A stretch of 64,000 nt of DNA, from sequence record ON190025.1, one strand, 5' to 3'. Below are positions 25,893 to 61,064 of the stretch, in pieces. The notes beneath the pieces were generated by a model. That model was not told where the DNA came from. It did no database searches and saw nothing but the letters and a program-made list of their open reading frames with translations. Both the position numbers and the translations under genes were made by a program. Positions within the stretch are counted from its first letter, which is position 1; the number at the start of each line of letters is the position of its first letter.

Positions 25893-26285
25893 ATGGCATA
25901 TCAAGTAATCAACGGCAAATTGCGTAAAGTAAAGAAAAACAAGCCACGCGACTATGATAAAGAGTGGTCAAAGATGCACGAAACTGCCAAGAAGCAAGCA
26001 GAAATCATGGATCGCATTCATGAACGTGAGCGCATTGAACGTCTAGGTTCTCGTGAGCGTCATGAAGCAATGATTGACCTTGCTAAACGCAATGATCGTA
26101 AAGGTAAGAAAGGCGGCGACTGTAACGTAACTCAGTGTCAAAAGCCCGGTGCAAGCTCTTACAACACTGCAATGAGAGCGTATTACTGCGAGTCTTGTGC
26201 TAAAGAAATTTGGCTAGCAGGTCAACGCGAGGGTCGAGACTTCATTCGACCAACACCAGACTACACATACAAATACGAGGGTTAA
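25893..26285 (+). CDS. basic protein with putative Zn finger
   Basis: CNVTQC...YCESC. Confidence 0.65.
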   Translation: MAYQVINGKLRKVKKNKPRDYDKEWSKMHETAKKQAEIMDRIHERERIERLGSRERHEAMIDLAKRNDRKGKKGGDCNVTQCQKPGASSYNTAMRAYYCESCAKEIWLAGQREGRDFIRPTPDYTYKYEG

Positions 26286-26289
26286 TCTC

Positions 26290-26529
26290 ATGGGCGAATT
26301 TTTATTTCTTATGTTCATTATCACGTTTGTGTTGTCAAACGTTATAGCGATTTTCATTGGTTTGCATGTGATCTTCGAACGTCAATACAACATACCCATG
26401 GTGGTGGTCATGTTATATGGCTTCATTGGTACGCTACTCGTAGCAACTGTTATGTCTATTCTGTTCGTCTTATGTAAAATCGAAGAAACAGAATTTTGGC
26501 GAAAAATTTCCAAAATGAGAGAAATCTAA
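26290..26529 (+). CDS. small two-TM membrane protein
   Basis: Two hydrophobic segments. Confidence 0.65.
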   Translation: MGEFLFLMFIITFVLSNVIAIFIGLHVIFERQYNIPMVVVMLYGFIGTLLVATVMSILFVLCKIEETEFWRKISKMREI

Positions 26530-26864
26530 TGCAGCAAATTGTATTATATGTTGATTACCAAAACCCCCGCACTGCAATCGTAGCTGATACTACGTTGAGA
26601 GACGCAGATTATGACCTATCTGGTATGGGGTTGTCTAAAGCATGTCAATCAAATTACATTGCACTTGAGAAGAACGGCAAATGGCGTCTTGTGAAATGTC
26701 GTTATATGATTGGATTTGAATCAATGGAATTCAGCACGATTGATGGGATAGTTGCGTTCATCAATGCGATTAACATCGACAACAATCAAGCAACGATTAA
26801 ATCAGTCGTGTTTGAAAAAGTCGCGCCTGTGTATGAAAACATCAAAGTAAGAGGTTTATCATGA
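26529..26864 (+). CDS. hypothetical protein
   Basis: Start at 26529 coupled to the upstream stop. Confidence 0.6.
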   Translation: MQQIVLYVDYQNPRTAIVADTTLRDADYDLSGMGLSKACQSNYIALEKNGKWRLVKCRYMIGFESMEFSTIDGIVAFINAINIDNNQATIKSVVFEKVAPVYENIKVRGLS

Positions 26865-27142
26865 GTTTTGAAACAAAGATTGTCTGTTACGGTGCACTTG
26901 TAACTGAAGTTGAGCATGGATGGGGTACTCGACCAGATGGTTACATCATCGCGAAAAGCGAAGCTGAAGTGCTGAAAAAAGGTGCTGAAATGCGAGAAAT
27001 TGCTGCAAAAGCGAAGTACGGCTATGAATATATCGGTGACGTATTTACATTCGAACCGACTCAAAAAGCTATCGAAGAGTTGACCAACCGCGAGTTCATT
27101 TGGACTGGTCGTGACTTCTCTGAATGGGGTAAACGAATTTAA
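26861..27142 (+). CDS. hypothetical protein
   Basis: EHGWGTRPDG; AGAGG SD. Confidence 0.65.
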   Translation: MSFETKIVCYGALVTEVEHGWGTRPDGYIIAKSEAEVLKKGAEMREIAAKAKYGYEYIGDVFTFEPTQKAIEELTNREFIWTGRDFSEWGKRI

Positions 27143-32827: not shown

Positions 32828-33496
32828 ATGTTAGACAAAAATAAAGTAGATCCAATTCTTGGACAAAAAGTTGAAGCGCATCTTCGTGAAATCGGAATGC
32901 ACACGCCGACTGTTGAAAACGGTCTAACTGATGATGAAAAGAAAGTAATTCTTGAAGATCGATTCACTGACATCATGCAAGCTCTAGGTCTTGACCTTAC
33001 TGACGATTCACTTGTTGATACACCGAAGCGTTGGGCTAAGATGATGGTCAATGAACTCATGAGCGGTCTATCACCAGATATGTTCCCTAAATGTACTGCT
33101 GTAGACAACAAAATGAACTACGATCAGATGGTTTGTGAAAAAGGCATTACTGTTCTTTCACAATGTGAGCATCACATTGTAACAATCGACGGCTTTGCAA
33201 CAGTTGCATATATCCCAAATAAGAAAGTACTTGGTCTTTCTAAGATGAATCGCATCGTCGAGTACTTTGCTCGACGCCCACAGATTCAAGAGCGTTTGAC
33301 TGTTCAAATCGCTGAAGCACTGAAGTTCATTCTTGAAACAGAAGATGTTGCAGTACTAATCGATGCCAAACACTATTGCGTCAAGGCACGCGGTGTTGAA
33401 GACAACAACTCAAGCACTGTTACAAGTCACCTATCAGGTGCATTTCGTACCGAACCAGAAGCACGCGCCGAATTCATGTCTCTAGCACGAGGGTAA
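32828..33496 (+). CDS. folE: GTP cyclohydrolase I
   Basis: DTPKRWAKM, SQCEHH, GLSKMNR, RPQIQERLT, HYCVKARG. Confidence 0.95.
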   Translation: MLDKNKVDPILGQKVEAHLREIGMHTPTVENGLTDDEKKVILEDRFTDIMQALGLDLTDDSLVDTPKRWAKMMVNELMSGLSPDMFPKCTAVDNKMNYDQMVCEKGITVLSQCEHHIVTIDGFATVAYIPNKKVLGLSKMNRIVEYFARRPQIQERLTVQIAEALKFILETEDVAVLIDAKHYCVKARGVEDNNSSTVTSHLSGAFRTEPEARAEFMSLARG

Positions 33497-34876
33497 TTGA
33501 TGATAATTGAATACGTTATGTCTGCGACGGGTCATGCTCGTCTTGGTGCAGCACATAAACTAATGGACGTGGTTGACACGTCCTATTTGCGTAAAATACT
33601 AGACACAGCACAAGATCTCGACGGTGTTCATAAAATCAGTATGTTGTATAACGCATACACTGAAAAGAAAGTCGGTAAGCAAATTAAAGACTTGTTCGGT
33701 GATTCTGTATACAAGATTCATGTCGATTCTGGCGGTCTTCAGATTGTTAACTTAGGTCTAGAGAATACACCAGAACTTCGTAAAGCAGTTTACGAGAATC
33801 AAGCAGAGTCTGGTGATATTGGCATGTGTTTCGATGAAATCCCGTTGCATAATGAAGCACAAGGTGGTGGTTCTGCTCGTATCAACACGAAAGACAAGGT
33901 CTTCATGTATGATCTAGCGTACAAATACGGTGTTAAAACAGGTAAGAACATACGCGCTCAGATTGAAACATATCTTGAGAAAGAAAGCGATTGTAAACCG
34001 TACATAATCTTACAAGGCAACTCAGACGATGACTTTAAGGCATTCAGTGATGGTATAATGTCACAACTTGAAGGCGTTGAGCATCACATTGCTGGTTGTG
34101 CTGCTGCCGATACATGTATTGGTAATGGCGTACGTGAGTCTATTGACATGATGAGTGTCATTCCGAAGCTCAATATCCCAGATAAAGCAAAGAAATCTGT
34201 GCATATGCTAGGTGTCGGTTCTGTTAAGCGATTGTTGCCTGCTGTAGCTCTTATCAGAAGCGGTTATTTCGGTGACGATTTTCACATTAGCTACGACTCA
34301 TCAACTCACACTGGTTGTTTAACCAATCGTGAATACACAGATAAGCTCGGTCGTCGTCGTAAGATCTCAGGTCACGGTATCTTTAAAGATGGTAAGAAAT
34401 TACCGTCGCGTGAACTAGATGAAATGCTAGATGAAGTGTGGGGTCGTTTCGGTCATGTGTTACCTCGGGGTAAAGAAGAGTTCAAAGAGTTCGCAACACG
34501 ATTGTGGTTGAAAGAACTCGACAAAGAAACGATGACAGACGAAGATATTGTGTTTGAAGTTGCTTGTAATATGTGTATAATCTTATCACAAGTCAATAAT
34601 TTCCAAGCAATCATCTCCGAAACTCTTGACTTGAATACACCGAAAGCAGTTGACTTATCATCATTCTTCGGCGGGGTTGTAGAAGAAAAAGAACCACAAG
34701 AAGGGTTTAAGAAATGGTCTTCGATTCGTCGTCTAGACGTTTTAGATAAACTACTTGATGTGAAAGACGTTGCTGCATATCAGCGATGGCACGCAAGTCA
34801 TATTGACAAGCTACCATCTATGCGTATTCGTCGCGGTACAACTGCTGAATTCCCAGCTTTCAAAGAACAAGAATAA
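33497..34876 (+). CDS. dpdA: TGT-like DNA 7-deazaguanine transglycosylase (DpdA2-type)
   Basis: VDSGGLQ, CFDEIP, ILQGN, HMLGVG, SYDSSTH; embedded in the preQ0 pathway cluster. Confidence 0.75.
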   Translation: MMIIEYVMSATGHARLGAAHKLMDVVDTSYLRKILDTAQDLDGVHKISMLYNAYTEKKVGKQIKDLFGDSVYKIHVDSGGLQIVNLGLENTPELRKAVYENQAESGDIGMCFDEIPLHNEAQGGGSARINTKDKVFMYDLAYKYGVKTGKNIRAQIETYLEKESDCKPYIILQGNSDDDFKAFSDGIMSQLEGVEHHIAGCAAADTCIGNGVRESIDMMSVIPKLNIPDKAKKSVHMLGVGSVKRLLPAVALIRSGYFGDDFHISYDSSTHTGCLTNREYTDKLGRRRKISGHGIFKDGKKLPSRELDEMLDEVWGRFGHVLPRGKEEFKEFATRLWLKELDKETMTDEDIVFEVACNMCIILSQVNNFQAIISETLDLNTPKAVDLSSFFGGVVEEKEPQEGFKKWSSIRRLDVLDKLLDVKDVAAYQRWHASHIDKLPSMRIRRGTTAEFPAFKEQE

Positions 34877-34877
34877 T

Positions 34878-34915
34878 AAAATGGGTTGACAATTGTCAAC
34901 CCATTTTTGTATAAT
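34878..34915 (+). promoter_or_regulatory. 30-bp perfect palindrome acting as terminator and early promoter
   Basis: AAAATGGGTTGACAA|TTGTCAACCCATTTT; TTGACA (34886) -18- TATAAT (34910). Confidence 0.75.
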
Positions 34916-34946
34916 GCATATTGGTTACATTTAAGAGAAAAATATA

Positions 34947-36605
34947 ATGAGTAAAAGCGATTACTATGTGTATCTGTTAATAGACCCTCGAACAAATAAA
35001 GTATTTTATGTAGGAAAGGGTAGGAATGAACGTGCTAAGTTTCACGAATCCGAAGTTCGTCGAGATATTTCAAGCAACCGAGTACTAAATTCAGCAAAGA
35101 AAAAAGAAATTAACGACATCATCAAGAGTGGTTATGATGTCGTTATTAAAATAGTCAAAGACAATTTAACTGAAGATCTTGCATTCGGTATCGAATCGAA
35201 TCTCATTGAATCATTTGGTATCGAAAATCTATCAAATGCAGTGCGCGGGCATCATAGAGAAAATTGCGAGCGTTTTAAACTGTCAATGTCATTCGACTCT
35301 GAATTGTCATCTATATATACAACAACACTGTACAACGTATTCAATCGAGCATTTTCGAATGACTACAATGGTAATAAGTGTCAATCTCATTTAATTTCAA
35401 ATCATAATGTACTAAGAACAATGCTCAAAGCAGTCAACATGATTGACAATGACGGTATGTGGCGTAACACATCGCGTACAGTATTATGTGTTGAATGTAT
35501 TGAAGTTGTTTACCTTGCATATATGTTAGGTGCAGATATGAGTAAGATAACATTTGCCACATCGTCATTGAAAAAAATTGAATGGGTTTCAGAACGATTC
35601 GGTATTAGAACACAATACAATGTATTAGGAGCAGTCATGGAAAAATTTGACGTGTGTATTATGAATCCACCATACGAACGAACACAAGGGAAACTGTTTG
35701 TTGAGAAATGCATGGAATATGCGCATGAAGGTGTTATCATCGGGTTAGCTAACTTAGTTATGGACTATTGCAAATACACACGCGGTACGTCGCAGAAAAA
35801 CCCAGCGCAAAACTTTTCACAAACGTTATTAGATCGTTCGCGTGAAATTTACATGACGAATAACACGCTCGTAGACGGCACGACTATTTTCAGCGCAAAC
35901 ATGAAGAACATGATTATAATTGCCTCATGGGATGCAAATGAGACAAATTCAACAAAAGTAATCAACTATCAAACGGGCAAGCAAACTGTTGTGAAACGAG
36001 GTGAACGAGTCTCTTTCTTATTAGATCAAAAGAACAAAGAAATAGTTGATTCCCTGCACGAAATATTCAAAGAACGTAAGCCTTTAATTGCTGACGATAA
36101 TGTACAACTTTTCCAAAAAGGTCGTATCGTTGATAATGAACGTTTCAAAGGTATCAACTCGATCACGTACCCGATTCATGTTCAACTATGTTCTGCCGAA
36201 ACATCACCGGCGTCTGGTGGAGATAAAACGACTCAAATCGGTGCGTTAGATAGTGTATCTGCGATGATGTTTAACAAAACATTCACTCATGATAAAATAA
36301 ACAACTACAAAGACATTCAATCACGCATTGAAGAAGAACAAAGAACAATCAAACGTGGTAGTTGCGAGAATAACCCGTTAATTGCCGCCTTCAAAACAGA
36401 AGAAGATGCTAAACGAATGTTCGATTGGTTTAAAAACCCATTGATATGTCTATACGCTCTTCATACTGATTATATGCAACACGGGTATGGTATCAATACA
36501 GTCCCTATGCCATTCTGTACAATCGAAGAATTGATTGATATGGCGGGGTTGACACAAGAACACATAGAATACGCACAAAAAGCATATGAGGGTTATGCGG
36601 AATGA
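34947..36605 (+). CDS. GIY-YIG nuclease fused to the catalytic (NPPY) half of an N6-adenine methyltransferase and a putative target-recognition region
   Basis: YVYLLIDPRTNKVFYVGKG..R...H, E..LIE..G...L.N; FDVCIMNPPY; no canonical FxGxG. Confidence 0.7.
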   Translation: MSKSDYYVYLLIDPRTNKVFYVGKGRNERAKFHESEVRRDISSNRVLNSAKKKEINDIIKSGYDVVIKIVKDNLTEDLAFGIESNLIESFGIENLSNAVRGHHRENCERFKLSMSFDSELSSIYTTTLYNVFNRAFSNDYNGNKCQSHLISNHNVLRTMLKAVNMIDNDGMWRNTSRTVLCVECIEVVYLAYMLGADMSKITFATSSLKKIEWVSERFGIRTQYNVLGAVMEKFDVCIMNPPYERTQGKLFVEKCMEYAHEGVIIGLANLVMDYCKYTRGTSQKNPAQNFSQTLLDRSREIYMTNNTLVDGTTIFSANMKNMIIIASWDANETNSTKVINYQTGKQTVVKRGERVSFLLDQKNKEIVDSLHEIFKERKPLIADDNVQLFQKGRIVDNERFKGINSITYPIHVQLCSAETSPASGGDKTTQIGALDSVSAMMFNKTFTHDKINNYKDIQSRIEEEQRTIKRGSCENNPLIAAFKTEEDAKRMFDWFKNPLICLYALHTDYMQHGYGINTVPMPFCTIEELIDMAGLTQEHIEYAQKAYEGYAE

Positions 36606-37090
36606 CATACAGCGATACGAATCGTTATTCAGATGATGTTAGCTTAGAGCGTCGAAAGAAGACAGGTGAAGTATTCACCCCTCTGAATTTCGTTGATTTC
36701 ATGATCGATCAAAAAAAGCATTTACTGGAAGCTGGTAAGACATGGTTCGAGCCAAGCTTTGGTGACGGTAATATAGTTTGTCGTATAATCGAACGCAAAA
36801 TTGATATCGGCGTCGAACCATTACAAGCAGTTCGAGATGTATACGGTTGTGAATATATGAAAGACAATTATGAGTGTACTCTTCAGAGAATACGTGATAT
36901 AGTAGGCGAGTCCGATGAACTCGAAGAGATAATGTCTAATAATCTAGCATTTTGCAACACGTTAGACAAAAACGACCGAAGCGAGGGTCGTGAATGGCCT
37001 TCTTGGTTGTTGCAGCTAGACAGAAAATGTTTAAGAGAATCAGGCGGACTTGCGAGTTTTTTCGATTCAAATAATGAAGGTAAAAATTAA
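36602..37090 (+). CDS. SAM-binding half of a gamma-class N6-adenine methyltransferase
   Basis: Motif X GEVFTP, motif I FEPSFGDGN, motif II YGCEY, motif III CNTL; no NPPY. Confidence 0.7.
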   Translation: MTYSDTNRYSDDVSLERRKKTGEVFTPLNFVDFMIDQKKHLLEAGKTWFEPSFGDGNIVCRIIERKIDIGVEPLQAVRDVYGCEYMKDNYECTLQRIRDIVGESDELEEIMSNNLAFCNTLDKNDRSEGREWPSWLLQLDRKCLRESGGLASFFDSNNEGKN

Positions 37091-38001
37091 TGACATCTAA
37101 TTATGATGAAGTATCAGCTATTGCGGCTGAGCATTTAGGTAAAAAAGCTGGCGATTACAGCGATTTCGTTAATATCGTAGACGTTCGACCAGATTTACTT
37201 GTACCAATCCCGCGTGAGCTAAATCGAACTGATTACGGTATCACAAACGAAGACTTTGCAGGGTTTGATACATGGCATGGCTTCGAAGTATCGGCACTGA
37301 CTGAACAAGGTCTGCCTGTATCTGGTATGGCGAAAGTCGTATACCCGAGCGATTCACCGAATATCGTTGAAAGTAAATCAATGAAACTGTATTGGAACAG
37401 TTTCAACATGGCAAAAGTCGCTGCGACTCGTGCTGAAGTACAAGGTGCAATTGAAGCTATCGCGTCGCGTGATCTATCTGAAGTCATCGGTGCTGAAGTA
37501 CAAGTGAGCTTCTTCACAGTCAGATCAACACAACCGCACGGTATGACAGGGTATGCAGAACTCGACAAATACGTATCTGAAGACACTGTATTCGACTCAG
37601 AAAGCGGTGCAGATGCTGATTTACTGCAAGAATCTCACGTGAAGCGCATGAAAGTGTTCACGCCGAATCTACGTTCTAACTGTCGCGTGACGCATCAACC
37701 AGATTTCGGTGATCTGTATGTATACATGAAAGGTGAAAAAACACCAACTATTGACAGTCTCATGCAATACATCGTGTCATTCCGTAAAGAGAATCATTTC
37801 CATGAAGAATGTGTTGAAATGATTTACAAAGCGTTACTTGATAAGTTCGACCCACAAGAGCTTATGGTAACAGCGTTATACACACGTCGCGGCGGTTGGA
37901 ATATCTGCCCAGCACGTGCAACGCATGAAGAACTACTACCAGAAGCACTTGGTAGTGAAGTTGTCTCGCACACTAACGGAAGTTGTTTATTCCGTCAGTA
38001 A
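37090..38001 (+). CDS. queF: preQ0 reductase, bimodular E. coli-type QueF
   Basis: VESKSMKLYWNSFN, RSNCRVTHQPD, ENHFHEECVE, YTRRGG. Confidence 0.9.
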   Translation: MTSNYDEVSAIAAEHLGKKAGDYSDFVNIVDVRPDLLVPIPRELNRTDYGITNEDFAGFDTWHGFEVSALTEQGLPVSGMAKVVYPSDSPNIVESKSMKLYWNSFNMAKVAATRAEVQGAIEAIASRDLSEVIGAEVQVSFFTVRSTQPHGMTGYAELDKYVSEDTVFDSESGADADLLQESHVKRMKVFTPNLRSNCRVTHQPDFGDLYVYMKGEKTPTIDSLMQYIVSFRKENHFHEECVEMIYKALLDKFDPQELMVTALYTRRGGWNICPARATHEELLPEALGSEVVSHTNGSCLFRQ

Positions 38002-44218: not shown

Positions 44219-44797
44219 ATGAGTAGCACAAAAGGTAAAGTCAACAAAGACGATTACTACGCTACGCCAGACTGGATTGTTGAAGAGTTTCTACTAGAGT
44301 TTGAAACTCGCATTCAGCATGAGCACGAGAAGAGCATGGCAGGTATGTACGTGCTCGACCCATCATGTGGTGGTTGTTCAGAACACAAAGCAGCATATCC
44401 CGTAGCATACAAGAGTTTGTATCATGTTGATATTGACACAATGGACATTCGCGAAGACAGTCACGCGCAAATTATCGCGAACTATCTTGAAGCTGATGTT
44501 CAAGTGAATTACTACGATATGATCATGACTAACCCACCGTTCAGCTTATCAGTTGATTTTGCAGAGAAAGCACTGAGCGAAGTCAAGAATGGTGGTTATG
44601 TTGTCATGCTACAACGTCTTAACTGGCTAGGTAGTATCAAACGAAAGCCTTTCTGGGATGAAGCACCCCTGAGAGCAGTGATGGTTCATCATCGAAGACC
44701 ATCATTTCACGGTACAAAAGGCACAGACTCGATTGAGTATGCGCACTTTGTATTTCAAAAAGGTTACGCAGGTAAAGCAGAGATTATAGTAATATGA
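44219..44797 (+). CDS. DNA N6-adenine methyltransferase
   Basis: DYYATP, VLDPSCGG, IMTNPPFS, RLNWLGS..R. Confidence 0.85.
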   Translation: MSSTKGKVNKDDYYATPDWIVEEFLLEFETRIQHEHEKSMAGMYVLDPSCGGCSEHKAAYPVAYKSLYHVDIDTMDIREDSHAQIIANYLEADVQVNYYDMIMTNPPFSLSVDFAEKALSEVKNGGYVVMLQRLNWLGSIKRKPFWDEAPLRAVMVHHRRPSFHGTKGTDSIEYAHFVFQKGYAGKAEIIVI

Positions 44798-53988: not shown

Positions 53989-54015
53989 AAAAAAGCGCCT
54001 GTAGGCGCTTTTTTT
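53989..54015. terminator. bidirectional terminator
   Basis: A6 GCGCCT-GT-AGGCGC T-run. Confidence 0.8.
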
Positions 54016-54730
54016 ATATTTCCTCAAACCAATACCCCTCTTTCTCGTTGCGAATATATCTTTGCACCGTAGAAGCACTACAGCCATTTTCTTTAGCTGC
54101 GGATCTCAATGAGCTGAATACTCCATTTGGCGTGTGATAATACCCTCTGAATTTAGGATGCGATTCTGCTGTATTTTTCCCGCGAGTGTTTTTAGATATT
54201 TTGCTCAACGTCTCTTTTGAGTGTTTGGTTCCAAACATTGGATTTTTATCACCGACACGCTTCCCTACTTGAGATTGCGAGATTTTAAGTTTCTTGTCTT
54301 CGCTGAGAGTCTTCCCGAAAGAGTGATGTTCTTCGCCTGATTTATATTCTCTACCACAATTTTTCAGTGCGATTGAGATTTTCATTCTGTGTTCAGGTGT
54401 CTTCGGGACACCTCTCTGAGATTCAGCTTTATGTTTACGTGCATATGCAAACGTCCTGCTTGTGTATCGGCGTTTTGTATTAGGTCCCGACATGCACATT
54501 GCGTACCATGCATTTAATGTTCCATAATTTCGAAAACGTTTATATAACAGCCAGTGTGCTATATAATGTTCTCTTGCTGTCAGTGCAACTATATTGTCAC
54601 TGTCATCGGTTCCATTCATGCAGCGAGGGACTATGTGGTGCATTTCTATGTATTCTGATGAGTTTTCTTTCGACCAAGAACGGTCAACTGCACGCGCTAT
54701 AAGCTCGTTATATATTCTTTCGTAGTTCAT
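54014..54730 (-). mobile_element. free-standing Mob-like HNH homing endonuclease with NUMOD3-type repeats
   Basis: NYERIYNELI, EMHHIVPRCMNG.D...N...LTAREHYIAHWLL; KTPEHRMKIS/KHSKETLSKIS; start at 54730 after GGGA. Confidence 0.85.
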
Positions 54731-54763
54731 TGTTATCCCACATCGGATCATCACTTAGATATA

Positions 54764-59382: not shown

Positions 59383-60408
59383 ATGTCACACGCAATCTTT
59401 ATCGGACGCTTTCGTCCATTCCACAACGGTCATCTATCTGCAATCACCCAAGCGTTCGAATCGCTTAATCTAGACAAGATGACTATCTTAATCGGTAGCT
59501 CTAATCGACATCGCTCAGTTAAAAACCCCTTCACGTTCGAAGAAGTACGTGATATGATGGGTATTGCTCTACCTGACGATATTCGAAGCAAAGTTCGCTT
59601 TGTACCACTAGGTGATTACGCGAAAGACGACGTTTGGCAGTCAAATGTTCGTTCTCATACAAAAGGTGCCACTCACATCGTTGGTTACGACAAAGACGAA
59701 AGCAGCTACTATCTCAAGCTATTCCCTGAGCTAAAACTATTTCAACCTGAACCAGTGAAGATGTATAACAGAGTTATCTCTGCAACTGACTTCAGAGAAC
59801 TGTACTTCAGCGAGATTCTACTGAACCACCCTGTTATGTCTGGTCTGATTCCCAAGCAAACAATGATGTTTCTTGACGATTGGAGCAAAACAGAGCATTT
59901 CACTGAAATGAAAGCTGAATACGATAGCTCAGTGCGCGAAATCGAGAAGTTTAAAGACTATCCCTACCAAGGTCACTTGAATATCGCGTGTGCTGACAGC
60001 GTTGTGATGTGTGCAGGTCATGTTCTTCTTGTCGAGCGTAAGTTCAACCCAGGCAAAGGCTGTTTAGCATTACCTGGCGGTCATAAGCACGAGAAAGAAA
60101 CATTCTTGTCTGCTGCGATTCGTGAACTGCAAGAAGAAACTAACATCAAAATCCCAGAGAAAGTCTTGCGTGGCTCTCTCAAAGGTGAGAAGATGTTCGA
60201 TAACCCTAATCGATCTTACCCTCACACTCGTATCACAATGGCATATCACTTCAAAGTGCAGCCAAACCCTGACAACACTTTCCCGAAAGTGAAACCAGCC
60301 GATGATGCTGTGTCTGCAAAATGGTATTCGTTGAGCGAAGTAATGGAAATGCAAGAACGTTTGTATGACGATCATTATCAAATCATTCAGTACTTCACTG
60401 GCATCTAA
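59383..60408 (+). CDS. natV: bifunctional NMN adenylyltransferase / Nudix ADP-ribose pyrophosphatase (NadM-Nudix, NatV-like)
   Basis: FIGRFRPFHNGH, KNPFT, ISATDFR, Nudix ALPGGH...E....AAIRELQEET, ADDA, DDH. Confidence 0.9.
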   Translation: MSHAIFIGRFRPFHNGHLSAITQAFESLNLDKMTILIGSSNRHRSVKNPFTFEEVRDMMGIALPDDIRSKVRFVPLGDYAKDDVWQSNVRSHTKGATHIVGYDKDESSYYLKLFPELKLFQPEPVKMYNRVISATDFRELYFSEILLNHPVMSGLIPKQTMMFLDDWSKTEHFTEMKAEYDSSVREIEKFKDYPYQGHLNIACADSVVMCAGHVLLVERKFNPGKGCLALPGGHKHEKETFLSAAIRELQEETNIKIPEKVLRGSLKGEKMFDNPNRSYPHTRITMAYHFKVQPNPDNTFPKVKPADDAVSAKWYSLSEVMEMQERLYDDHYQIIQYFTGI

Positions 60409-60444
60409 CTAACGGGGCAGTAATGCCCCTTTGAGGAAATTAAT

Positions 60445-60717
60445 ATGAGCATTAAACAATTAGCAAAAACTGAAGTAAACAATTACAACACTGCATACGT
60501 AGATGTATACAAAATTCGTGAAGATATGATTGCAAAGTACTCTGCTGCTCGTGCATGTGTTGAACGCGGCGATGGTACTATGAAAAACTGTACATTACGT
60601 CGTGAAATCTGTCGCGCTCTTGATAATTCTAGTGATTGGAATAAAGTTGCTAAGACTGATTCTGGTCGTCTATTGTATCAACGAGTGAAAAGCAATTCAC
60701 TAGAGAACTTTGTATGA
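60445..60717 (+). CDS. hypothetical protein
   Basis: GAGG SD. Confidence 0.65.
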   Translation: MSIKQLAKTEVNNYNTAYVDVYKIREDMIAKYSAARACVERGDGTMKNCTLRREICRALDNSSDWNKVAKTDSGRLLYQRVKSNSLENFV

Positions 60718-61064
60718 ACGCATACCGAATCAACACATCAATCGAAGATCTAGCAATAGTAAAAGGCGATTTGTTTGTTCAAAGTCCATTCAATGAACAT
60801 GAATATAAAATGGCTCGTCAACCCCAACGACCACCAATGCACATCGACTTGATTACTCAGTTTCATCATCTTTATAATGAAACGACTGCTACTGATGACG
60901 AAATCGCTGAATTGGTTCTAGAATGGAAGAATCAATTCAAAACACGAACCGAAGCATTGAATATGTTTCGCCAATCACTAATCGAACAGCGCCAATCGAT
61001 TGATGAACAAATCAAACAAACTACATCTACCATTGAACAATTACGTGAAAAGTTCGGAGAGTAA
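60714..61064 (+). CDS. hypothetical coiled-coil protein
   Basis: ORF track. Confidence 0.65.
   Translation: MNAYRINTSIEDLAIVKGDLFVQSPFNEHEYKMARQPQRPPMHIDLITQFHHLYNETTATDDEIAELVLEWKNQFKTRTEALNMFRQSLIEQRQSIDEQIKQTTSTIEQLREKFGE

What the first reader, a model, noticed from the sequence alone, without database searches (positions are those of the whole stretch)
34878..37090. GIY-YIG nuclease fused to half of a split adenine methyltransferase, inserted into the deazaguanine cluster
Seen: between dpdA and queF lies a two-gene cassette with its own promoter in a perfect 30-bp palindrome. ORF1 (552 aa) has an N-terminal GIY-YIG domain, then a region with motif IV (FDVCIMNPPY) but no canonical SAM-binding FxGxG, then a long C-terminal region. 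The overlapping ORF2 (162 aa) has motifs X, I, II and III (GEVFTP, FEPSFGDGN, YGCEY, CNTL) and ends before motif IV. Established: gamma-class m6A MTases run X-I-II-III-IV-TRD, and Type IIG enzymes combine nuclease, MTase and TRD, usually with a PD-(D/E)xK nuclease. Inference: the two ORFs reconstitute a heterodimeric, permuted MTase with an attached GIY-YIG nuclease. This would be a phage-borne restriction-modification-like module that could cut unmodified host or co-infecting phage DNA, or a selfish element whose specificity comes from an MTase TRD.
Basis: partly seen in the sequence, partly recalled or inferred. Interest (0 to 1): 0.8.

Follow-up and report, generated by a model that had tools for sequence, protein, structure and literature searches.

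The report
Phage nuclease fused to split methyltransferase
A 2.2-kb mobile cassette in a Vibrio T4-like phage encodes a GIY-YIG nuclease fused to the catalytic half and DNA-reading domain of an adenine methyltransferase, with the cofactor-binding half on a second small protein: a compact, untested relative of a widespread bacterial restriction-modification design.

Summary
The window is Vibrio phage PVA23/phi-ST2. A 2.2-kb cassette (34876-37098) replaces the 29-nt dpdA-queF spacer that more than 40 relatives keep.

- **Promoter:** it carries the only perfect sigma-70 promoter in the 64 kb, set in a perfect 30-nt palindrome.
- **ORF1:** GIY-YIG nuclease, then a degenerate cofactor-binding half, then NPPY motif IV, then a TaqI-like recognition domain.
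- **ORF2:** motifs X-I-II-III only.

Single-chain phage relatives are colinear with ORF1(233-552)+ORF2, and the split falls in a linker. Canonical-order relatives also exist. The same split recurs in Shigella, Klebsiella and Aeromonas phages and in metagenomes. In 80 bacterial loci the ORF2-like half is always a separate gene. It usually sits beside a helicase protein that PADLOC calls Type IIG. In Actinobacteria a third gene begins exactly at motif IV.

Both ORFs are under purifying selection. The link to deazaguanine is positional only, because DpdM is a different protein.

Best reading: a mobile, Type IIG-like nuclease-methyltransferase with a naturally split gamma-class methyltransferase. 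Complex formation, methylation and cleavage are untested. It is a new variant of a known kind.

The parts
34876..37098 (+). The inserted cassette as a whole. It runs from the last base of the dpdA stop codon to queF codon 3. It replaces the GCGCC..GGCGC hairpin spacer and the native queF start (MSNYD becomes MTSNYD).
   Evidence: Alignments of the occupied site against the empty sites of R11Z and KVP40. More than 40 relatives cover only 51% of the query, in two pieces.
34878..34907 (.). Perfect 30-nt palindrome (13-bp stem, 4-nt loop) followed by a T run. Probable terminator for dpdA; it also holds the -35 hexamer.
34886..34915 (+). Consensus sigma-70-type promoter, TTGACA-18-TATAAT. It is unique in the window.
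   Evidence: 1 match, 0.10 expected.
34947..36605 (+). ORF1, 552 aa: nuclease, pseudo N-half, catalytic C-half and TRD.
   Evidence: dN 0.17 against the 77%-identical metagenomic copy, with dS saturated.
34965..35288 (+). GIY-YIG nuclease domain (residues 7-114), of the GIYxY-YIG type, with catalytic residues intact.
   Evidence: Pfam PF22945 6e-16; PADLOC PD-T4-3; PDB 9U7U/9U75 CMoRE at 3e-9; PMC12923530.
35394..35642 (+). Degenerate cis N-half (residues about 150-232). Predicted beta-alpha-beta-alpha-beta; VLCVECIEVV stands where motif I would be; no glycine loop.
   Evidence: Conserved in PSD9, KpV477, Ah1, P0034 and P0204. AF2 pLDDT about 70-78 here. Foldseek matches whole small methyltransferases: 1ne2 TMt 0.60, 1wy7 0.55. 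No sequence-profile similarity to the true N-half.
35643..35996 (+). Catalytic C-half (motifs IV-VIII). FDVCIMNPPY is at 35646-35675.
   Evidence: NPP and F251 are invariant across relatives.
35997..36602 (+). Target-recognition domain, TaqI/Eco57I-like, with a conserved F.T.EEA...P motif. It ends at the linker where single-chain relatives continue into motif X.
36602..37090 (+). ORF2, 162 aa: AdoMet-binding N-half only. Motif X 36665-36682, motif I 36746-36772, then II and III.
   Evidence: phrog_21201 at 2e-83; phrog_11371 positions 271-383. Profile matches to M.BseCI and HsdM. 569 representative relatives, mostly standalone proteins of 120-200 aa.
33497..34876 (+). Left flank: DpdA2-type transglycosylase (phrog_10773). 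Not part of the cassette.
   Evidence: PMC10516641.
37090..38001 (+). Right flank: queF. Its ribosome-binding site and first codons are now supplied by the cassette.

Best explanation
This is a mobile two-gene cassette. It encodes a Type IIG/IIC-like combined nuclease-methyltransferase whose gamma-class N6-adenine methyltransferase is naturally split.

**The two proteins.**
- ORF1 carries a generic GIY-YIG cleavage domain, a dead relic of the AdoMet-binding half, the NPPY catalytic half and a TaqI-like target-recognition domain.
- ORF2 is translationally coupled to ORF1 and supplies the live AdoMet-binding half (motifs X, I-III) in trans.

**Shown.** The domain content, the cassette's status as an insertion, the colinearity with single-chain relatives, the recurrence of the split, and purifying selection.

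**Inferred.**
- ORF1 and ORF2 assemble into an active heterodimer that methylates a short TRD-defined site in the phage genome.
- The tethered nuclease cuts DNA at or near unmethylated sites, in host or co-infecting cassette-free phage DNA.
- Those breaks, together with the strong early promoter, favour spread of the cassette by recombination.

The position between dpdA and queF is an insertion site, not a functional link.
For: **Insertion and promoter.**

**Domains.**

**Colinearity.** phrog_11371 is a 383-position profile. ORF1 232-337 maps to positions 2-98 and ORF2 3-122 maps to 271-383. Aeh1p090 (415 aa), G2_0023 (384 aa), P0028, P0036 and P0088 start at motif IV and end with X-I-II-III. 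The ORF1 end and ORF2 start align to their inter-domain linker. An AF2 model of Aeh1p090 has pLDDT 76 and pTM 0.74. Its best PDB matches are CamA, M.TaqI, BrxX, LlaBIII and DrdV. Canonical-order relatives are P0026 and P0203.

**The split recurs with different effectors.**
- PSD9: 499 + 160 aa.
- KpV477.
- Ah1: 545 + 166 aa, with a weak T5orf172-like N-terminal match.
- L017: a 1243-aa protein with no Pfam domain match, plus 177 aa.
- L019: 4-nt overlap.
- L009: 77% identical, at the same site.

**Bacterial loci.** In 80 of 80 loci the ORF2-like half is a separate gene of about 215-260 aa. In 75 of 80, FDVVIGNPPY lies about 3.3 kb downstream. In at least 45 of those it opens a separate gene of about 345 aa that begins at motif IV, so complementation in trans is unavoidable there. 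In the one such locus tested, the large partner matches PADLOC REase_MTase_IIG at 1.5e-43, plus ResIII and Eco57I.

**Selection.** dN is 0.10-0.23 in every ORF1 segment and in ORF2, against saturated dS.

**Mobility.** The cassette is absent from relatives that are 99.4% identical in Vibrio phages, and from 97%-identical relatives in Dhakavirus, at a different locus.
Against: - No experiment or complex prediction shows that ORF1 and ORF2 bind each other.
- ORF1's own degenerate N-half is predicted, at moderate confidence, to complete a Rossmann fold next to motif IV. Where ORF2 docks is therefore unresolved.
- The whole ORF1 model is poor (pLDDT 55.6).
- Pfam matches to the methyltransferase parts fall below the curated cut-offs.
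- The recognition site is unknown.
- A nuclease aimed at a short site needs complete self-methylation of a 247-kb genome.
- In the Klebsiella phage examined, KpV477, the ORF1 homologue is broken into 381 + 110 aa, and matches in the other Klebsiella phages stop at about the same point, so the nuclease-bearing gene may be dispensable there.
- SNP density around the cassette gives no clear co-conversion signal.
Confidence: 0.55

Rival explanations
1. Anti-restriction orphan methyltransferase carried by a homing nuclease. On this reading the ORF1+ORF2 methyltransferase protects phage DNA from host restriction enzymes. The GIY-YIG domain serves only to move the cassette, by cutting the cassette-free allele near dpdA/queF. 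It does not act as a methylation-sensitive restriction nuclease.
For: - Nuclease-free single-chain relatives in Aeromonas phages look like ordinary orphan phage methyltransferases.
- The GIY-YIG subfamily is the one found in NUMOD-bearing putative homing nucleases.
- The window and its relatives hold other free-standing homing-endonuclease genes.
- The cassette replaces an intergenic spacer precisely.
Against: - The nuclease has no DNA-binding module other than the methyltransferase/TRD. Its targeting should therefore follow the short methyltransferase site, not a long homing site.
- The same scaffold carries what looks by eye like a PD-ExK motif (P0034) or a helicase-like region (L017). Neither is backed by a Pfam match.
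- Its bacterial relatives are called RM-type by PADLOC.
Confidence: 0.25
2. Seg-like homing endonuclease that uses a catalytically dead methyltransferase purely as a DNA-binding domain. ORF2 would be an unrelated or vestigial fragment.
For: ORF1 lacks an AdoMet motif I of its own. The cassette's distribution is sporadic and intergenic.
Against: - NPPY/NPPF is invariant in all relatives.
- ORF2 keeps E/D-P-x-x-G-D-G-N and the motif II acid.
- ORF2 is tightly linked and overlapping in every split lineage.
- ORF2 is under purifying selection.
Confidence: 0.08
3. A recent frameshift, pseudogene or sequencing artefact of a single permuted methyltransferase gene.
For: ORF2 is in the -1 frame relative to ORF1 with an ATGA overlap, and single-chain relatives exist.
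Against: - The split is present in PVA23, in phi-ST2 and in a 77%-identical metagenomic copy.
- It is present in PSD9, Ah1, L017, L019 and 80 bacterial loci, with different overlaps and gaps. That rules out a conserved slippery site.
- dS is saturated while dN stays low.
Confidence: 0.03
4. A deazaguanine-pathway enzyme, for example a dPreQ1 N-methyltransferase, placed between dpdA and queF for functional reasons.
For: Its location inside the folE-dpdA-queF-queC cluster. NPPY enzymes methylate amino groups.
Against: - The dPreQ1 methyltransferase of these phages is DpdM, a DUF3109 protein.
- phi-Grn1 lacks the cassette and phi-ST2 has it, yet their mdPreQ1 levels are alike: 35 against 44 per 10^6 nt (PMC10516641).
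- Homologous cassettes sit in unrelated contexts, for example between primase and dCTPase in PSD9 and KpV477.
Confidence: 0.03

Closest known systems
Type IIG/IIC combined restriction-modification enzymes (Eco57I, BpuSI, MmeI; PMC4081073)
   Same: An N-terminal nuclease, then a gamma-class NPPY adenine methyltransferase, then a C-terminal specificity domain. Both activities use one recognition module. Foldseek matches to TaqI, CamA and MmeI.
   Different: The nuclease is GIY-YIG, not PD-(D/E)XK. The AdoMet-binding half is a separate polypeptide. ORF1 keeps only a dead relic of it. The system is carried by a lytic phage as a sporadic cassette.
Bacterial two- and three-gene systems found here (L022-L101): a small N-half methyltransferase, a ResIII/SNF2 helicase protein (PADLOC REase_MTase_IIG PDLC03626), and a C-half+TRD
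   Same: The live N-half is a separate small protein. There is a degenerate cis N-half just before motif IV: class A has ILEINSKTGLYPL, and class B has X'-I'-II'-III' at the helicase C-terminus (hhalign 95% to the ORF2 family). The TRD is of the same family.
   Different: The effector is a helicase motor of 1100-1470 aa, not a 115-aa GIY-YIG domain. The N-half gene comes first. The hosts are Actinomycetota and Firmicutes. Homology of the phage pseudo-half to the bacterial one is not detectable by profile comparison.
Single-chain circularly permuted methyltransferases of Aeromonas T4-like phages (Aeh1p090, phage 65, G2_0023; phrog_11371)
   Same: Colinear with ORF1(233-552)+ORF2. Same motifs and same TRD.
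   Different: One polypeptide, no nuclease, no pseudo-half.
Free-standing GIY-YIG homing endonucleases of T4-like phages (Seg proteins, I-TevI)
   Same: An N-terminal GIY-YIG cleavage module tethered to a specificity module. Intergenic, sporadic, with its own promoter.
   Different: No NUMOD, zinc-finger or HTH modules. The specificity module is a methyltransferase/TRD that appears to be catalytically maintained.
CMoRE / PD-T4-3 (PDB 9U7U, 9U75; PMC12923530)
   Same: The closest solved GIY-YIG domain (GIYxY-YIG). One generic nuclease plus a C-terminal sensor domain.
   Different: CMoRE's sensor reads 5hmC/5ghmC. Here the sensor is a methyltransferase/TRD.
Naturally heterodimeric methyltransferases M.EcoHK31I and M.AquI (PMC2836561, PMC3404938)
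   Same: A DNA methyltransferase made of two polypeptides.
   Different: Those are C5-cytosine enzymes, split elsewhere, with no nuclease.
Beta-class amino methyltransferases (order IV-TRD-I; PMC7544214)
   Same: The gene order ORF1 then ORF2 gives IV-TRD-X-I-III.
   Different: Sequence and fold relatives are gamma-class (BseCI, HsdM, TaqI, CamA). There is no PF01555 match.

Membership tests
Gamma-class N6-adenine DNA methyltransferase (Eco57I/TaqI/HsdM type) | Motif IV (N/D)PP(Y/F/W) | tested here: met
   FDVCIMNPPY at ORF1 234-243. N240, P241 and P242 are invariant in 16 relatives.
Gamma-class N6-adenine DNA methyltransferase (Eco57I/TaqI/HsdM type) | AdoMet motifs X and I-III | tested here: met
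   Present in ORF2 only. A profile of the ORF2 family matches M.BseCI at 1e-5 and HsdM at 6e-5.
Gamma-class N6-adenine DNA methyltransferase (Eco57I/TaqI/HsdM type) | Order X-I-II-III-IV-VIII-TRD in one chain | tested here: not met
   Two chains, and the gene order is IV-TRD then X-I-III.
Gamma-class N6-adenine DNA methyltransferase (Eco57I/TaqI/HsdM type) | Pfam gathering score (PF07669 / PF02384) | tested here: not met
   Eco57I scores 18.0 bits against a cut-off of 25.3. ORF2 has no Pfam methyltransferase match. The canonical-order relative P0026 passes at 47 bits.
Type IIG/IIC restriction-modification enzyme | Nuclease, gamma-class methyltransferase and specificity domain sharing one recognition module | tested here: met
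   Domain order in ORF1. One tested bacterial relative matches PADLOC REase_MTase_IIG.
Type IIG/IIC restriction-modification enzyme | PD-(D/E)XK nuclease domain (true of the majority) | tested here: not met
   The domain is GIY-YIG.
Type IIG/IIC restriction-modification enzyme | AdoMet-dependent or AdoMet-stimulated cleavage, and methylation of the same site | not testable with these tools
   Needs biochemistry.
Free-standing GIY-YIG homing endonuclease (Seg-like) | Intact GIY-YIG catalytic residues | tested here: met
   Y7/Y9, Y21, R29, H33, E83 and N97 align with CMoRE.
Free-standing GIY-YIG homing endonuclease (Seg-like) | Sporadic intergenic insertion between conserved genes | tested here: met
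Free-standing GIY-YIG homing endonuclease (Seg-like) | NUMOD/HTH/zinc-finger DNA-binding tail and a long asymmetric target in the empty allele | tested here: not met
   ORF1 has no NUMOD match. Cleavage of the empty allele cannot be tested here.
PD-T4-3 / CMoRE | C-terminal modified-cytosine sensor domain | tested here: not met
   Only residues 4-105 match the PADLOC model, at positions 14-115 of 256.
Beta-class amino methyltransferase (PF01555) | Sequence membership in N6_N4_Mtase | tested here: not met
   No match. Only the motif order agrees.
DpdM (dPreQ1 methyltransferase) | DUF3109 fold with a CxxxCxxCC motif | tested here: not met
   ORF1 and ORF2 have no DUF3109 match in Pfam, and no CxxxCxxCC run is visible in either sequence. 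DpdM is a separate gene, present with or without the cassette.

The most novel reading that the evidence does not exclude
The clade-wide pairing of a dead AdoMet-binding half in cis with a live one in trans could be a molecular switch. It is seen in phage ORF1/ORF2, in class A Firmicutes proteins, and in class B Actinobacteria, where the relic sits on the helicase.

- With the relic docked on the catalytic half, the enzyme would recognise DNA and license its nuclease or motor.
- When the AdoMet-loaded small subunit displaces the relic, the same recognition event would lead to methylation instead.

The stoichiometry of the small subunit would then set the balance between restriction and modification. 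In the phage version this would give a homing-type selfish element whose immunity is methylation rather than disruption of the target site.
Probability: 0.15. Interest if true: 0.85.

Novelty: new variant of a known kind. Interest (0 to 1): 0.66.

Why it matters
- **A new Type IIG-like layout.** It would be the first combined nuclease-methyltransferase of the Type IIG kind that I could find built on a GIY-YIG nuclease. It would also be a natural gamma-class adenine methyltransferase that works as two polypeptides split between motifs III and IV.
- **A record of how methyltransferases get permuted.** The family holds canonical, permuted, split and relic-bearing forms side by side. That is a rare living record of circular permutation in methyltransferases.
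- **A widespread split.** The same split, with a dead cis half, turns up in hundreds of bacterial RM-like loci. The phage cassette is a small, tractable model (about 700 residues in total) for a widespread and apparently undescribed subunit arrangement.
- **Phage biology.** It suggests a restriction-like weapon or selfish element that moves among T4-like phages.
- **Practical use.** A short-site, methylation-gated GIY-YIG nuclease could be a useful enzyme scaffold.

Tried and rejected
- **Word-based protein searches.** With ORF1 or alignment A3 as query, the hits were swamped by GIY-YIG-only proteins and gave no methyltransferase relatives.
- **Mixed alignments.** Alignments that combined GIY-YIG-only and methyltransferase-only proteins (A7, A9) aligned LLIDPR with IMNPPY. 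I discarded them.
- The PSD9 ORF1 homologue has no relative in IMG/VR.
- **Phage pseudo-half.** Profile comparisons against the ORF2 family, against PDB and against the bacterial pseudo-half found nothing beyond motif IV. Its Rossmann nature therefore rests only on a moderate-confidence AF2 model and on its position.
- **Co-conversion test.** SNP density against R11Z is about 0.5-1% beside the cassette and 0-0.3% on the right-hand side, but the left-hand background is mosaic, up to 8.8% per kb. The result is inconclusive.
- **DpdM hypothesis.** Checked in the literature and rejected.
- **Programmed frameshift.** There is no slippery heptamer, and the overlaps and gaps differ between lineages.
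- **Literature searches.** Searches for GIY-YIG Type IIG enzymes, split adenine methyltransferases and DUF4145-helicase systems found no description of this arrangement. The MANTIS system is unrelated.
Full report
**Identity and observation.** The window is 100% identical to Vibrio phage PVA23 and 99.5% identical to phi-ST2 (Schizotequatrovirus, KVP40-like) over 33500-38000.

ORF1 (34947-36605, 552 aa) and ORF2 (36602-37090, 162 aa) overlap by ATGA. The ORF2 stop overlaps the queF start as TAATG. The stretch 34878-34907 is a perfect 30-nt palindrome. TTGACA-18-TATAAT (34886-34915) matches the consensus 12 of 12 and is the only such site in the 64 kb, where 0.10 are expected. The hairpin followed by a T run also reads as a terminator for dpdA.

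**It is an insertion.** Only PVA23 and phi-ST2 cover the whole query. R11Z, Va3, ValKK3, phi-Grn1, VH7D, KVP40 and about 35 further relatives match in two pieces, with dpdA separated from queF by 29 nt. Alignment of the occupied and empty sites puts the left edge at the last base of the dpdA stop codon and the right edge at queF codon 3. The native GCGCC..GGCGC hairpin and the queF start (MSNYD) are replaced by the cassette's palindrome and by MTSNYD.

A metagenomic relative (L009, a 146-kb contig) carries a 77%/79%-identical ORF1/ORF2 pair at the same site, with flanks 80-86% identical. Between the two copies dS is saturated. dN is 0.10-0.23 in each ORF1 segment (GIY-YIG, pseudo-half, IV-VIII, TRD) and 0.15 in ORF2. 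Both genes are therefore under purifying selection.

**Domains.**
- ORF1 residues 7-114 match the LEM-3-like GIY-YIG family (6e-16) and PADLOC PD-T4-3 (2.5e-15).
- The closest solved structure is CMoRE/PD-T4-3 (9U7U, 9U75). The tyrosines, R29, H33, E83 and N97 all align (PMC12923530).
- Other members of this GIY-YIG subfamily carry NUMOD1 or NUMOD3 tails, or are annotated as phage homing nucleases. The domain is thus a generic cleavage module that takes its specificity from whatever it is fused to.
- ORF2 is phrog_21201, 'DNA methyltransferase' (2e-83). A profile of its family matches the N-terminal X-I-II region of M.BseCI and of Type I HsdM.

**The split is real and maps to a linker.** phrog_11371 (383 positions) matches ORF1 232-337 at positions 2-98 and ORF2 3-122 at positions 271-383. 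Aeromonas phage proteins Aeh1p090 (415 aa) and G2_0023 (384 aa), and metagenomic P0028, P0036, P0088 and P0195-P0202, begin at motif IV (for example MHFDYMIANPPY) and end with X-I-II-III. In alignments, the ORF1 C-terminus and the ORF2 N-terminus abut the inter-domain linker of these single chains.

An AF2 model of Aeh1p090 has pLDDT 76 and pTM 0.74, with both halves above 85-90. Its best PDB matches are the gamma-class enzymes CamA, M.TaqI, BrxX/PglX, LlaBIII/LlaGI and DrdV. Canonical-order members also exist: P0026 (388 aa, Eco57I 3e-12) and P0203. One family therefore shows the gamma order, the beta-like permuted order (IV-TRD-I; PMC7544214) and the split form.

**The split recurs, with interchangeable effectors.**
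- Shigella phage PSD9: 499 + 160 aa, with a 17-nt overlap, lying between primase and dCTPase.
- Klebsiella phage KpV477: 381 + 110 + 153 aa.
- Aeromonas phage Ah1: 545 + 166 aa. Its N-terminus matches T5orf172 weakly. This phage also carries a single-chain paralogue.
- A viral contig (L017): a 1243-aa protein, which looks helicase-like by eye but has no Pfam match, plus 177 aa.
- A short contig (L019) with a 4-nt overlap.

All of these show the same pair. P0034 (814 aa) joins an N-terminal region that looks by eye like a PD-ExK nuclease, the relic, IV-TRD and X-I-III in one chain.

PSD9 is the only one of 725 matching records with the cassette. Its 97%-identical relatives lack it. An exhaustive search with ORF2 found 569 representative relatives. 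Of the best 150, 134 are standalone proteins of at most 277 aa, nine are C-terminal parts of permuted chains, and six are N-terminal parts of longer chains.

**Bacterial relatives.** I scanned one genome per species with an alignment of the ORF2 family. This gave 80 loci, from Actinomycetota, Streptococcus, Lactococcus and Proteus.
- In all 80, the ORF2-like half is a separate protein, about 215-260 aa in most, with no NPPx motif.
- In 75 of 80, FDVVIGNPPY lies about 3.3 kb downstream.
- **Class A.** The motif sits near residue 1120 of a protein of about 1450 aa. In the one example tested, that protein has DUF4145, ResIII/SNF2 and Eco57I domains and matches PADLOC REase_MTase_IIG at 1.5e-43.
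- **Class B.** In at least 45 loci the motif opens a separate gene of about 345 aa (MSKKFDVVIGNPPY...TRD), which follows a ResIII helicase of about 1100 aa. There the catalytic half has no N-half of its own, so complementation in trans is unavoidable.

This is the strongest indirect support for an ORF1-ORF2 heterodimer, and for filing the system with restriction-modification enzymes.

**The relic N-half.** Between the nuclease and motif IV, ORF1 has about 80 conserved residues (VLCVECIEVV...ITFATSS...FG). They show a beta-alpha-beta-alpha-beta pattern and have no glycine loop. PSD9, KpV477, Ah1, P0034 and P0204 share this region.

The AF2 model of ORF1 is poor overall (pLDDT 55.6), but it reaches 70-78 across residues 150-270. 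Foldseek aligns the model to complete small methyltransferases (1ne2 TMt 0.60, 1wy7 0.55) and to TaqI, CamA and MmeI. ORF1 is therefore predicted to hold a whole Rossmann fold whose cofactor half is dead.

Bacterial relatives have the same feature. The class B helicase ends with a degenerate X'-I'-II'-III' (LVFTPQPVV...ADLFSTAGLF). It is homologous to the ORF2 family (hhalign 95%, E 2e-8) and to the region before motif IV in class A (99%, E 3.5e-19).

The phage relic is not detectably homologous to either of them, nor to anything in PDB. How two N-halves share one catalytic half is unresolved. It is the most interesting open point.

**Function.** Nothing here tests activity. I commit to a Type IIG-like mechanism. 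The heterodimer methylates a short TRD-defined site. The tethered GIY-YIG domain cuts DNA where that site is unmethylated. The cassette behaves as a mobile, selfish or competitive element.

Supporting points:
- The domain order matches the Type IIC/IIG layout (PMC4081073).
- The bacterial relatives are RM-type.
- The catalytic motifs are maintained.
- The distribution is sporadic and covers several loci.
- The cassette has a unique consensus promoter.

The main rival (0.25) is an anti-restriction methyltransferase that a homing nuclease merely carries about.

The deazaguanine context is positional only. The dPreQ1 methyltransferase of these phages is DpdM (DUF3109). phi-Grn1, without the cassette, and phi-ST2, with it, have similar mdPreQ1 levels (PMC10516641).

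**Novelty.** GenBank calls ORF1 'hypothetical protein' and ORF2 'DNA methyltransferase'. The PVA23 genome paper does not mention methyltransferases or homing endonucleases at all. Earlier surveys noted GIY-YIG fusions to a different NPPY family (COG4123; PMC1564403). The known natural heterodimeric methyltransferases are C5 enzymes. I found no description of this arrangement. I rate it a new variant of a known kind, with interest 0.66.

Noticed in passing
window 44219-44797 (+): A compact 192-aa protein with YATP, VLDPSCGG and MTNPPF motifs. It looks like a complete minimal NPPF methyltransferase with no recognition domain and has no Pfam match. It is identical in R11Z, where it is annotated 'DNA methyltransferase'. 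So the phage core genome has its own amino-methyltransferase, independent of the cassette.
   Followed up: partly
window 54014-54754 (-): A free-standing HNH + NUMOD3 homing-endonuclease gene, in a segment that does not align with R11Z. It is a second presence/absence mobile gene in the same window.
   Followed up: partly
L001:736-1437 (-) (phi-ST2); L009:3795-4496 (-): phi-ST2 and the metagenomic relative carry a 233-aa gene, annotated 'mob-like homing endonuclease', between folE and dpdA. In the window, folE ends at 33496 and dpdA starts at 33497, with no such gene between them. Pfam finds no domain in it.
   Followed up: partly
L021:33711-35087 (R11Z), against window about 27370: R11Z has a 458-aa gene with weak reprolysin-like metallopeptidase matches. 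It is absent from the window at the corresponding junction.
   Followed up: no
L022-L101 (80 bacterial loci): A widespread operon made of a small N-half methyltransferase, a ResIII/SNF2 helicase protein, and a C-half+TRD that is either fused to the helicase or a separate gene starting at motif IV. The helicase side carries a degenerate N-half. PADLOC labels the tested large protein Type IIG. I found no literature on the split.
   Followed up: partly
P0120 (454 aa); P0106 (448 aa): P0120 has what looks by eye like an HNH-type nuclease motif N-terminal to an ORF2-like N-half; Pfam confirms only the methylase part. P0106 joins a complete beta-class N6_N4 methylase (PF01555, 1.5e-20) to an extra ORF2-like N-half. 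The N-half module is combined with other partners too.
   Followed up: no
L012:3001-4245 and L015:3001-5175 (Aeromonas phage Ah1): One phage carries both a single-chain permuted methyltransferase (92% identical to Aeh1p090) and a split pair. The large subunit of the split pair has a weak T5orf172-like N-terminal match.
   Followed up: partly
L004:2520-4453 (Klebsiella phage KpV477; other Klebsiella phages not read): In KpV477 the ORF1 homologue is broken into ORFs of 381 aa and 110 aa within the TRD. Matches in the other Klebsiella phages stop at about the same point of the query. This is either a further split or decay.
   Followed up: no
L001:5030-5130, against window 37070-37090: phi-ST2 has one A fewer in the A run before the ORF2 stop. 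Its ORF2 therefore ends differently (167 aa) and overlaps queF by 17 nt.
   Followed up: yes
window 26001-27000 and 60001-61000, against R11Z: Patches of 8.8% and 16% divergence in an otherwise 99-100% identical pair of genomes. This points to mosaic recombination tracts.
   Followed up: no
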